Shown one piece after another: positions 57,125 through 60,100 of a DNA stretch of 64,000 nucleotides. How positions within the stretch are numbered: position 1 is the first letter of the stretch; each line of letters starts with the position of its first letter. Position numbers and translations under genes: made by a program. Source of the stretch: Piromyces finnis finn (lineage: Eukaryota; Fungi; Neocallimastigomycota); contig MCFH01000034.1 in the NCBI GenBank assembly GCA_002104945.1, positions 62,001 through 126,000 on the forward strand. The letters run 5' to 3'. The notes under the pieces were generated by a model. It searched no databases and was not told the origin of the DNA. It saw only the letters and a list, made by a program, of their open reading frames with translations.

Positions 57125-60100
57125 TTATTGTGGCTTAGTTTCACTTTCAACAAAGGATAATGCGTTTTCTTTTGAAATGTTGGTAATTGAACTAACTTTA
57201 TTAACAAAAGTTACACCATAAAATTGATTAGCATCTTCAATTAATTCTGGTCTGAAAGTTGTAGTGGTAAACTGACCATCTTTACTTAATTCATGTATCA
57301 TTGCTAAATTATAATCAAAGAATAGATTTTTTTTTATTTTAATATTTATAATTTTTTATAATTCATTTAGAAAAAAAAATAAAATATATATATATATATA
57401 TATATATAACAATTACCAGCAACAGCTTTTCTATGAACAGCATCAAGATTAGCATCAATTTCATCTATATAAAAAAAAAAGGTATATATGAAAATGATTA
57501 AAACCTTAATTCATTATATAGATATGAATAGAAATATATATATTTATTATATTATTTTAAAATTACCAAATAAATAAAATGGAGCTGGATCACATTGTTG
57601 AATAGAGAAAATTAAAGCTAAAGCAACCAATGACTTTTGACCACCAGAAAGTTGTTCAATTAATAAGCCCTCATCAGTTTTACTATTGAATGAAACTTTA
57701 ATAGCAACACCAAAGTATTGATCTATGTAACTATTTTTACCATTACCATTATCTTGACTATCATTTATTTCCTAAAATAATAAAAATAATTGATTCATTT
57801 TAATTAGTAATTAATATGCTTAACATACATATTAAAATTGACTATTATTAATATCATATATAATAATTAAGAAAGAAAAAAATCTATTTACATTTGGTGA
57901 TCTCTTAAGCATAATTAATTGACCACGACCTGCTGGAACAAGTTTTTCAAAAACTTCTGAGAAATATTTTGAAACTTGCTTAAATGTACGTTCAATTGCT
58001 TCATCTTTTCTTTGATCAAGAACATTAATTAAATTAGAAATTGATTGCGCTGATTTATCTAATTCATCTTTTCTATAGTTTAAAACATTGCGTTGTTTAG
58101 TGAAATTGTCATATTGTTCGAAAGCCTTTTTATTAATGTGGCTATATTTCTTTAAAACTTCCTTAGCATCCTTGAATTTCTTTTCAAGCTATATTTATAA
58201 AAAAAATTTAGAGTTTTATTATTAATCAAATAAAATTATCAATATTAATTAAAAAAAATTTTACTAATAAAGTATACTATCACTTACAATTGTTCTATCA
58301 ACATTTTGATACTTTTCAAATGCTTCATCTGGTAATACACCTAATTCACGAATTTTAAACATACTTTCTTCTCTTTGTTGAATATATCTCGAACGTTTAG
58401 CTAAATATTTTTCTGATTTACTTTGATACTTATTTTGTTTATTTTGAATAGTGTCAAGTTCAGTCTAAAAAAAAAAAATATTTATGTTTTAGTTATCAAA
58501 TAATTATAATGATAATTCTAAAGCATTTAATATTATATATATTACTTGGATAGATTCTAAAGCGTTATTTTCTTTCATAATTTTCTTTGTTATATTGTCA
58601 ATATTTCTTTCGAATTCTTTTAAATAAAATATAATAGGTATTATTAGATTATTAGATAATATTTAATAATATATTTAATATATATATTATTTTGCAAACT
58701 TATTTTAATTATTAATTTTTATATTTTTTATTTACCTGAAATTCTTTGTTCTAATTGCTTCAAATCAGATGAAACCTTTGTCAAATCATTTGAATAATTA
58801 TTATATTTTGTTTCTTCAACTTGAAGTGACATTGATTCAATCTTTGAATTGATTTGTTCACGTCTTAACTTGAGATTAGAATTTAATTCATTTTCTAAAA
58901 TATTCTTTCTACTTTCATTCTTTTTATATTAATTTTATTATAATATAATAATATATAATTGAGCATTTCATATTTAAAACATTAATATTTTTATACAATA
59001 TTTCTTTAGTTTGGATAATATTTCTCTCTTACCTTAGCTCTCTCAGTTGAAATTTCAAATAATTCAGCCTTCTTTTGATTAATTTCATTTGTAATTCTTT
59101 CTAATAAAACTTGTTCTTCGCTTGATAACTCGGAAATCATTTCAGTATGTAATTCATTATTTAATAAATCAATTTGAGCCTTCATTTTTATAATGGATAA
59201 ATTGATTTCTTGTAGTGATTTTTCCTATATAATAATTTAAAATAAATTATATATAATATATAATGACATTATACATAAACATAAACATTAAAATATGCTA
59301 ATTTAAACTATTATATTTTTATAGCATTAATTATAATACTTATTGGAAAATATAAATTTTCTTTATTTATTGATGTTTATACCTTTTGTGAAATCATATC
59401 ATTAATTAAAACATTTTCTCTGGATTTATTTTCTAAATCAAAAGTTAAAGTCCTGTTATTATCAAATGAGTAATGTCTTTCTAAATCCATGTTGGTTATT
59501 AAGTTTTGTGCCTTTGTAATTTCTTGGTTGAGCCGTATTTAAAATAAATTTTAAATATGGATTTATAGTTAAAAGAAATAACTACTATCATTACTAAAAT
59601 AATAATATAAAAATAAAATTATAATATAAAAAGGATATTTTCTATTTCGGCCTTTAATTTTTTATTATTTGCAGTTTCATTATCTAATAATTCTTTGAAT
59701 TTGGAAATATTTAAAATTGCCTCAAGCTTTGATTTTCTATTATCAATAAAACCACCAGTTAAAGTGCCCTTTCTATCTGCTCTATCACCATCTAAAGTAA
59801 CTGCATTAATATTATCAGTACGAGCAAATTGAGAAGCGATTTCAATATTTGGGCAAATAATTGCTTTGCCAAATACTTGTTGGAATGCTTTCTCAAATAT
59901 TGGATCATACTCTAACACACTTAACATAGTTTGATAAAGACCATCATCTTGTGGATAGTTTACTGGTTTTGGATGAAGACGATTTAATGGCATAAATGTC
60001 ACTCTACCGCTATTTTTATCTGTCATATGCTCTAATATTTGAGTAGCTGTTTCATCATTATCTACAACAATATGAAAGAGACTATTACCAGCAACAACTT

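What the first reader, a model, noticed from the sequence alone, without database searches (positions are those of the whole stretch)
59535..59638. AT-AC minor-spliceosome (U12-type) intron in cohesin SMC3
The hinge exon runs into a stop (…[10 protein letters not shown]), with no GT in the preceding ~40 codons and no AG at the start of the next exon. The gap instead starts with ATATCCTTTTT (U12 5' consensus RTATCCTTT) at 59638, ends in TAC at 59535, and holds a TTCTTTTAAC branch-like motif ~35 nt upstream of the 3' end. Splicing gives GAA A|GG CTC AAC CAA GAA = EIERLNQEI, which fits the SMC3 coiled coil. Established: the minor spliceosome is lost in Dikarya and retained only patchily in early-diverging fungi. 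This implies a working U11/U12/U4atac/U6atac system in this organism, gating an essential chromosome-cohesion gene. GT-AG-only annotation would mis-model it. It was the only such intron among those I traced in the window.
Basis: partly seen in the sequence, partly recalled or inferred. Interest (0 to 1): 0.8.

Follow-up and report, generated by a model that had tools for sequence, protein, structure and literature searches.

The report
Minor-spliceosome AT-AC intron in fungal SMC3
The 104-base gap in the cohesin SMC3 gene of this very AT-rich gut fungus is a real intron of the rare minor-spliceosome (AT-AC) type, sitting at the same codon as in a mycorrhizal fungus and a flowering plant; this is one more example of an ancient intron class already published for these fungi.

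Summary
On the minus strand the SMC3 hinge exon ends at 59639. The gap 59638-59535 starts ATATCCTTT, ends AAATAC, and restores the frame as ...KAEIE|RLNQEIT....

An intron-less mRNA-like contig (L006) is 98-100% identical to the exons of Neocallimastix lanati genomic DNA. It removes exactly the orthologous ATATCC...AAATAC intron there and joins the window's 59639 to 59534.

The same phase-1 AT-AC intron is present in four other gut fungi, in Rhizophagus irregularis and in the plant Thalictrum. The window's genome has U12 and U6atac above the Rfam thresholds, and U11 and U4atac just below. It also has CENATAC, SNRNP25-type and U11-48K-type protein matches.

Papers already report minor introns and snRNAs in Neocallimastigomycetes, Piromyces finnis included. 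They also list SMC3 as a minor-intron gene in human (AT-AC type) and maize. So this is a new member of a known kind. This scan has logged 42 similar notes elsewhere in this genome.

The mildly unusual feature is the conserved branch-like motif, 35 nt (up to 55 nt in relatives) from the 3' end, against the textbook 11-13 nt.

No read-level RNA evidence from this organism was obtained.

The parts
57125..63384 (-). SMC3 (cohesin) coding region: 24 exons and 23 introns (22 GT-AG, 1 AT-AC)
   Evidence: The exon blocks match the 1195-aa ORF of the mRNA-like contig L006 at 81-94% nt identity. The hinge exon hits Pfam SMC_hinge at 2.5e-29. The best solved structure is S. pombe SMC3, 6yuf_C residues 504-695, E 7e-58.
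59639..60221 (-). Exon 15 (hinge exon), ending ...KAEIE plus the first base (A) of the split Arg codon
   Evidence: It aligns end to end with Psm3 residues 504-695.
59535..59638 (-). Intron 15: 104 nt, phase 1, AT-AC termini, U12-type signals
   Evidence: The orthologous intron is removed exactly in the L006 cDNA against L014 genomic DNA. The same intron is present in L005, L013, L014, L015, L017 and L019.
59630..59638 (-). 5' splice site ATATCCTTT, a 9/9 match to the U12-type consensus
   Evidence: Invariant in all five fungal sequences of alignment A1.
59567..59582 (-). Conserved block GTTATTTCTTTTAACT holding the branch-like motif; the candidate branch A is at 59569 or 59570 (-35/-36)
   Evidence: The block is identical in L005, with the same 33-nt spacing to the 3' end although the spacer differs. 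YTTAAC is present in all four gut-fungal orthologs. TTAAC occurs in only 1 of 18 GT-AG introns of this gene.
59535..59540 (-). 3' end AAATAC (terminal AC)
   Evidence: TAAATAC|G is invariant in A1, Rhizophagus included.
59383..59534 (-). Exon 16: GG completes the Arg codon, then [10 protein letters not shown]...ISQK
   Evidence: The RL[DE]QEIT motif is shared by many fungal SMC3 proteins.
59523..59752 (-). Rival in-frame GT-AG bypass (G|GTTTTA...CAAG|AA) that a GT-AG-only gene finder would pick; I judge it not to be used
   Evidence: Positions. The same bypass is used in the public N. lanati model P0082, which lacks 42 residues that are present in the L006 mRNA.

Best explanation
Window 59535-59638 (minus strand) is intron 15 of the cohesin SMC3 gene of an anaerobic gut fungus (Neocallimastigomycota). 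It is a U12-type AT-AC intron removed by the minor spliceosome.

Inferred mechanism, from established knowledge of the pathway:
- U11 (with its 48K protein), and later U6atac, read the ATATCCTTT 5' splice site.
- U12 pairs with the TCTTTTAAC branch motif and bulges out an A.
- The intron is cut after ...GAAATAGAAA and before GGCTC, giving ...KAEIE-R-LNQEIT....

Shown here: the boundaries, their conservation, excision of the orthologous intron in Neocallimastix mRNA, and the presence of the snRNA genes and some minor-specific protein genes.

Inferred, not shown: that the minor spliceosome does the cutting in this species, and which A is the branch point.

The intron is ancient. It is retained at the same codon and phase in Rhizophagus and in a plant, and it was lost without trace in Basidiobolus, Spizellomyces and several intron-poor eukaryotes.
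For: - The sequence signals are at the exact coordinates.
- The hinge exon aligns end to end with SMC3 structures up to ...EIE.
- L006, an intron-less 3998-nt contig with a 1195-aa SMC3 ORF, joins the window's 59639 to 59534.
- L006 is 98-100% identical to the exons of N. lanati genomic L014. It joins L014 5081 to 5254, removing a 172-nt ATATCCTTTT...TTCTTAAC...AAATAC intron.
- Orthologous AT-AC introns were found in L005 (123 nt), Anaeromyces robustus L013 (140 nt), Piromyces sp. E2 L015 (5' splice site, then an assembly gap), Rhizophagus L017 (96 nt, C|ATATCCTTT..TCCTTAAG..AAATAC|GC) and Thalictrum L019 (G|ATATCCTG...GCAC|AG).
- Three conserved islands stand out in alignment A1.
- The transcript-based A. 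robustus model contains KAEIE|RLNQEIT.
- snRNA candidates: U12 66.6 bits (cut-off 53), U6atac 52.1 (33), U4atac 49.2 (53), U11 38.2 (39), all matched full length.
- The U4atac and U6atac candidates form an 11-bp stem.
- Protein matches: CENATAC/CCDC84, SNRNP25-type Ubiquitin_4 and a zf-U11-48K domain.
- Literature: PMC10639083 names P. finnis as having minor introns and snRNAs. PMC11347168 counts 129 minor introns in N. californiae. Human SMC3 has an A-type minor intron. [quoted passage not shown]
Against: - There are no junction reads from this organism. Runs X1-X4 hold 0.45-0.46 of the sampled words against 0.49 expected for exon-only content, which fits spliced transcripts but does not show the junction.
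- The branch motif has 3 mismatches to TTCCTTAAC and lies at -35, outside the 11-13 nt optimum (PMC3584512).
- Predicted pairing energy with U12 does not single the motif out. The 5' splice site itself and 4 of 18 GT-AG introns pair as well or better.
- U11 and U4atac fall just under Rfam's thresholds.
- PDCD7 and zf-SCNM1 were not found, though the controls were silent, so this is not informative.
Confidence: 0.93

Rival explanations
1. The gene is spliced by the major spliceosome through an in-frame GT-AG bypass (donor G|GT at 59752 or 59755, acceptor CAAG| at 59523). This would delete about 42 residues, and the ATATCC...AC match would be a coincidence.
For: The bypass is in frame, since 230 or 233 nt removed has the same remainder mod 3 as 104. 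The public N. lanati model P0082 uses exactly this solution.
Against: The L006 mRNA contains the 42 residues and is 100% identical to the flanking N. lanati exons. The deleted stretch aligns with the end of the SMC3 hinge in solved structures. It is conserved as coding sequence across five gut fungi. The donor GTTTTA is weak.
Confidence: 0.03
2. It is an AT-AC intron, but the major (U2-type) spliceosome removes it.
For: The branch-like motif is 35-55 nt from the 3' end, a spacing typical of U2-type rather than U12-type introns. U12 pairing energy is not distinctive.
Against: The 5' splice site is a perfect ATATCCTTT, the feature that defines U12-type introns (PMC3584512). The Rhizophagus ortholog has a canonical TCCTTAAG at -18. 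TTAAC is otherwise almost absent from this gene's introns. The minor snRNAs are present.
Confidence: 0.03
3. The stretch is not an intron: the locus is a pseudogene, carries an assembly error, or the stretch is retained and truncates the protein.
For: None beyond the lack of reads from this organism.
Against: All 24 exons are intact and 81-94% identical to a full-length mRNA ortholog. The same interruption with the same termini occurs in independent assemblies of four other species.
Confidence: 0.01

Closest known systems
Human SMC3 minor (A-type, AT-AC) intron
   Same: It is the same gene and the same AT-AC subtype. It is retained when the minor spliceosome is impaired (RNU4ATAC, CENATAC, RBM48). 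A CENATAC homolog exists in this fungus.
   Different: Orthology of position is therefore inferred from the plant and fungal comparisons only.
SMC3 AT-AC intron of Rhizophagus irregularis (L017 3920-4015) and of the plant Thalictrum (L019 15345-15610)
   Same: Same codon and same phase 1. ATATCCT at the 5' end and AC at the 3' end. TAAATAC|G is shared with Rhizophagus.
   Different: Rhizophagus has a canonical TCCTTAAG branch motif at -18. The gut fungi have YYTTAAC/TCTTTTAAC at -35 to -55.
Canonical U12-type AT-AC introns (consensus /ATATCCTTT ... TCCTTAAC ... AC)
   Same: Perfect 5' splice site, AT-AC termini, a branch-like motif ending in TTAAC, and all four minor snRNAs in the genome.
   Different: The branch motif is degenerate: the C-to-T changes would keep G-U pairs, and there is one extra U. 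Its distance to the 3' end is about three times the 11-13 nt optimum. The genome's U6atac is the '[GU]CCGA' CC variant rather than AAGGA.

Membership tests
U12-type (minor-spliceosome) intron | 5' splice site /RTATCCTTT | tested here: met
   ATATCCTTT at 59638-59630, 9/9. Invariant in five fungal orthologs.
U12-type (minor-spliceosome) intron | Branch-point sequence resembling TCCTTAAC, able to pair with U12 snRNA | tested here: inconclusive
   TCTTTTAAC has 3 mismatches to TTCCTTAAC. Relatives have TCCCTTAAC (1 mismatch) and ATTCTTAAC (2). The motif is conserved across species, and TTAAC is rare in the gene's other introns, 1 of 18. Pairing energy to U12 is not distinctive.
U12-type (minor-spliceosome) intron | Short distance from branch site to 3' splice site. 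The optimum is 11-13 nt; this is a typical property, and classifiers scan -40..-5. | tested here: not met
   The branch A lies at -35/-36 here, and at -52 and -55 in A. robustus and N. lanati, against -18 in Rhizophagus. It is inside the -40..-5 scan range of PMC2846911 but far from the optimum given in PMC3584512. I treat this as a departure in a typical property and not as disqualifying.
U12-type (minor-spliceosome) intron | AT-AC (or GT-AG) termini, with exact excision seen in mRNA | tested here: met
   The termini are read directly. Excision was shown for the ortholog by comparing the L006 mRNA with N. lanati genomic L014. It was not shown for this species.
U12-type (minor-spliceosome) intron | The genome encodes U11, U12, U4atac and U6atac | tested here: met
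   U12 and U6atac score above Rfam's gathering scores. U4atac (49.2 against 53) and U11 (38.2 against 39) are just below, with full-length matches and Sm sites. U4atac and U6atac form a stem.
U12-type (minor-spliceosome) intron | Excision depends on the minor spliceosome | not testable with these tools
   This needs snRNA depletion or inhibition, or branch mapping.
SMC3 (cohesin subunit) | SMC hinge domain, SMC N/C ATPase halves, and best matches to SMC3 rather than SMC1/2/4 | tested here: met
   Pfam SMC_hinge at 2.5e-29. In the PDB the SMC3 chains come first (E 7e-58 to 1e-34), ahead of SMC2 and SMC1 at about 1e-16. The ortholog ORF is 1195 aa, and named SMC3/SudA proteins head the homolog list.

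The most novel reading that the evidence does not exclude
In Neocallimastigomycota the minor spliceosome uses branch sites 35-55 nt upstream of the 3' splice site, three to five times the 11-13 nt optimum established in animals. That would be a relaxed or altered geometry for choosing the 3' splice site. The SMC3 intron would be a clean test case: its Rhizophagus ortholog keeps the canonical -18 spacing, while four gut-fungal orthologs keep a conserved YYTTAAC island at -35 to -55.
Probability: 0.45. Interest if true: 0.4.

Novelty: new member of a known kind. Interest (0 to 1): 0.2.

Why it matters
The practical value lies in annotation. GT-AG-only gene models delete 42 conserved residues of an essential cohesin subunit, as in the public N. 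lanati model, or translate the intron, as in several plant models.

The evolutionary value is modest. The finding adds a well-documented case of a minor intron kept at the same codon in gut fungi, Glomeromycotina and a plant. This fits published conclusions that minor introns date from early eukaryotes and survive patchily in non-Dikarya fungi.

The distant branch motif is the only aspect that could teach something new about how the minor spliceosome works.

Tried and rejected
- **Read-level RNA evidence.** The look-up of sequencing runs gave four probable transcript runs.
- **Next exon alone against the PDB.** The 50-aa exon gave no hit, being coiled coil.
- **Chance test of the 8-mer.** ATATCCTT is not enriched in the window, so the motif count alone is not evidence.
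- **U12 pairing energy as a test of the branch site.** It does not discriminate in this AT-rich DNA.
- **Search for a canonical AAGGAGAGA U6atac copy.** It gave 48 hits against 40 for the control, and the only U6atac-like hit is the CC-variant locus itself. I first took the GCCGA box for an anomaly.
- **PDCD7 and zf-SCNM1 families.** No match, but the controls were silent, so this is uninformative.
- **An in-frame GC-AG alternative (59651/59523).** I considered it and rejected it. Removing 129 nt does not restore the downstream frame, which needs a length leaving remainder 2 mod 3.
- **Asparagus RefSeq protein P0253.** It has no contig on record.
- **Joined window exons.** Exons were searched one by one by reference, and the full-length query was the unaltered ORF of the fetched locus L006.

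Full report
**Observation.** On the minus strand the SMC3 hinge exon runs ...AAG GCC GAA ATA GAA A and is followed at 59638 by ATATCCTTTTT. TTCTTTTAAC lies at 59577-59568. The gap ends AAATAC at 59535 and is followed by GG CTC AAC CAA GAA. Reading through gives [10 protein letters not shown] and a stop.

Two corrections of detail apply. The nearest upstream GTs are at 59755 and 59752, about 38 codons up. Paired with the AG at 59524-59523 they give an in-frame GT-AG bypass. The 8-mer ATATCCTT is also not rare in this roughly 20% GC DNA: there are 6 copies in the window against 7.07 expected. The other five copies have stop codons in every phase upstream. The significance therefore lies in where the motif sits.

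**The gene.** The hinge exon (59639-60221) hits Pfam SMC_hinge at 2.5e-29. It aligns end to end with S. pombe SMC3 (6yuf_C residues 504-695, E 7e-58) and with human SMC3 residues 531-704. SMC3 chains come well ahead of SMC1, SMC2 and SMC4. Against a full-length mRNA-like ortholog the gene resolves into 24 exons and 23 introns. Twenty-two introns are GT-AG and intron 15 is AT-AC (two introns were read).

**The junction at RNA level.** A metagenome scan with the hinge exon returned L006, a 3998-nt contig with an uninterrupted 1195-aa SMC3 ORF and none of the window's introns. It aligns to the window's exons at 81-94% nt identity and joins 59639 directly to 59534.

L006 is 98-100% identical to the exons of Neocallimastix lanati genomic DNA (L014). 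It joins L014 5081 to 5254, removing a 172-nt intron that starts ATATCCTTTT, holds TTCTTAAC and ends AAATAC. This is a cDNA-against-genome demonstration of exact AT-AC excision of the orthologous intron in a sister genus.

The flanking bases allow no shift of the cut sites. The intron's last base (C) differs from the exon's last base (A), and the intron's first base (A) differs from the next exon's first base (G).

The spliced product KAEIE|RLNQEIT matches the RL[DE]QEIT motif of many fungal SMC3 proteins. The transcript-based Anaeromyces robustus model contains it.

**Conservation.** The same phase-1 intron occurs in several other sequences:
- an unnamed gut-fungal metagenome contig, L005, 123 nt;
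- A. robustus, L013, 140 nt, and N. lanati, L014, 172 nt;
- Piromyces sp. E2, L015, where the 5' splice site is followed by an assembly gap;
- Rhizophagus irregularis, L017 3920-4015, C|ATATCCTTT...TCCTTAAG...AAATAC|GC;
- the plant Thalictrum, L019 15345-15610, G|ATATCCTG...GCAC|AG.

Four plant gene models read through the intron as 'DIL...', which is G|AT ATC CTx translated. Basidiobolus, Spizellomyces and several intron-poor eukaryotes have no intron at this site.

Alignment A1 shows three conserved islands in otherwise diverged sequence: ATATCCTTT, a YYTTAAC block and TAAATAC|G.

**The machinery.** The window's genome is 56,455,805 bases in 232 contigs. It has full-length candidates for all four minor snRNAs: U12 at 66.6 bits (cut-off 53), U6atac at 52.1 (33), U4atac at 49.2 (53) and U11 at 38.2 (39).

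The U4atac and U6atac candidates form an 11-bp stem, CGUCCUUAUCU with AGAUAAGGACG. The U6atac has GCCGA where AAGGA is usual, and no canonical copy exists. This is the '[GU]CCGA' CC variant catalogued in 2008 in cnidarians, Acanthamoeba, Physarum, moss and oomycetes (PMC2396436), so it is not an anomaly.

Exon-wise matches to CENATAC/CCDC84 (three exons over the cut-off), to the SNRNP25-type Ubiquitin_4 domain (35 bits) and to a zf-U11-48K finger (27-28 bits) are present. That Ubiquitin_4 marks SNRNP25 rests on my own knowledge. PDCD7 and zf-SCNM1 gave nothing, but the controls were silent.

**The branch site.** The best match to TTCCTTAAC is TCTTTTAAC, with the candidate branch A at -35/-36. 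The identical 16-nt block GTTATTTCTTTTAACT occurs in L005 with the same 33-nt spacing although the spacer differs. A. robustus has TCCCTTAAC at -52, N. lanati has ATTCTTAAC at -55, and Rhizophagus has ATCCTTAAG at -18.

The C/T differences would keep pairing with the GG of U12's GUAAGGA box as G-C or G-U. TTAAC occurs in only 1 of 18 GT-AG introns of this gene, 1 per 2085 nt. Its presence in all four orthologous AT-AC introns therefore argues for function.

Against this, predicted duplex energy with U12 does not single the motif out. The distance is also far from the 11-13 nt optimum (PMC3584512), although it lies inside the -40..-5 range that classifiers scan (PMC2846911). The branch assignment is therefore an inference from conservation.

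**RNA from this organism.** Four runs hold 0.45-0.46 of the sampled words of 57101-63100. That is close to the 0.49 expected if only exon words are present, which fits spliced transcripts of this or a near-identical strain.

I also joined no window exons for any search. Exons were searched by reference one at a time, and the full-length query was the natural ORF of L006.

**What is known.** Larue and Roy 2023 state that Neocallimastigomycetes, including Piromyces finnis and N. californiae, have minor introns and most or all minor snRNAs, and that Dikarya lack them (PMC10639083). PMC11347168 counts 129 minor introns in N. californiae.

Human SMC3 is a known minor-intron gene with an A-type (AT-AC) intron. 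That intron is retained in RNU4ATAC and CENATAC defects (PMC4667643 and bioRxiv 10.1101/2020.08.06.239418). [quoted passage not shown]

This scan itself holds 42 notes of U12 AT-AC introns elsewhere in this genome, and several remark on distant branch motifs.

**Verdict.** It is one more member of a published class, not a discovery about this organism.

The 'gating' idea is untested. [quoted passage not shown]

Two things are worth keeping. One is the annotation lesson: the N. lanati model loses 42 residues. The other is the conserved long spacing between branch site and 3' splice site in gut fungi.

Noticed in passing
L004:1501-1649 (G000 C112:211500-211648): The genome's only U6atac candidate has GAGCCGAGAGA where the consensus has GAAAGGAGAGA. 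This is the '[GU]CCGA' CC variant already catalogued in 2008 (PMC2396436). It pairs with the U4atac candidate (L003) through an 11-bp stem.
   Followed up: yes
L014 (N. lanati, protein P0082); plant proteins P0205, P0263, P0282, P0254: Public gene models mishandle this intron. The N. lanati model skips 42 residues through a GT-AG bypass. Four plant models translate the intron as 'DIL...'.
   Followed up: yes
L014 4662-4930 and L013 5153-5299, compared with window 59639-60221: The hinge exon is split by an extra intron (after ...TLDG) in N. lanati and A. robustus. It is uninterrupted in the window and in L005, so intron presence varies among gut fungi. Protein P0022 reads into that extra intron.
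   Followed up: partly
L021-L023 (G000 C112:739085-740745, minus strand): There is a CENATAC/CCDC84 homolog with three exon matches over Pfam's cut-off. In humans this factor acts selectively on AT-AC minor introns, that of SMC3 among them. There is no ATATCCTT in this locus.
   Followed up: partly
L002:2162-2325 (minus strand), about 550 nt from the U11 candidate: A SNORD14-like C/D box snoRNA match at 52 bits, below the gathering score of 64.
   Followed up: no
window 21823, 22260, 24563, 49990, 51191: Five further ATATCCTT copies lie in very AT-rich stretches with stop codons in every phase upstream. They are chance copies and not introns of coding genes.
   Followed up: yes
window about 61000-61066 (intron 11 of SMC3): A long (AAT)n microsatellite lies inside a GT-AG intron.
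   Followed up: no
Nothing was laid, and the stretch was kept out of all later searches.
   Followed up: no
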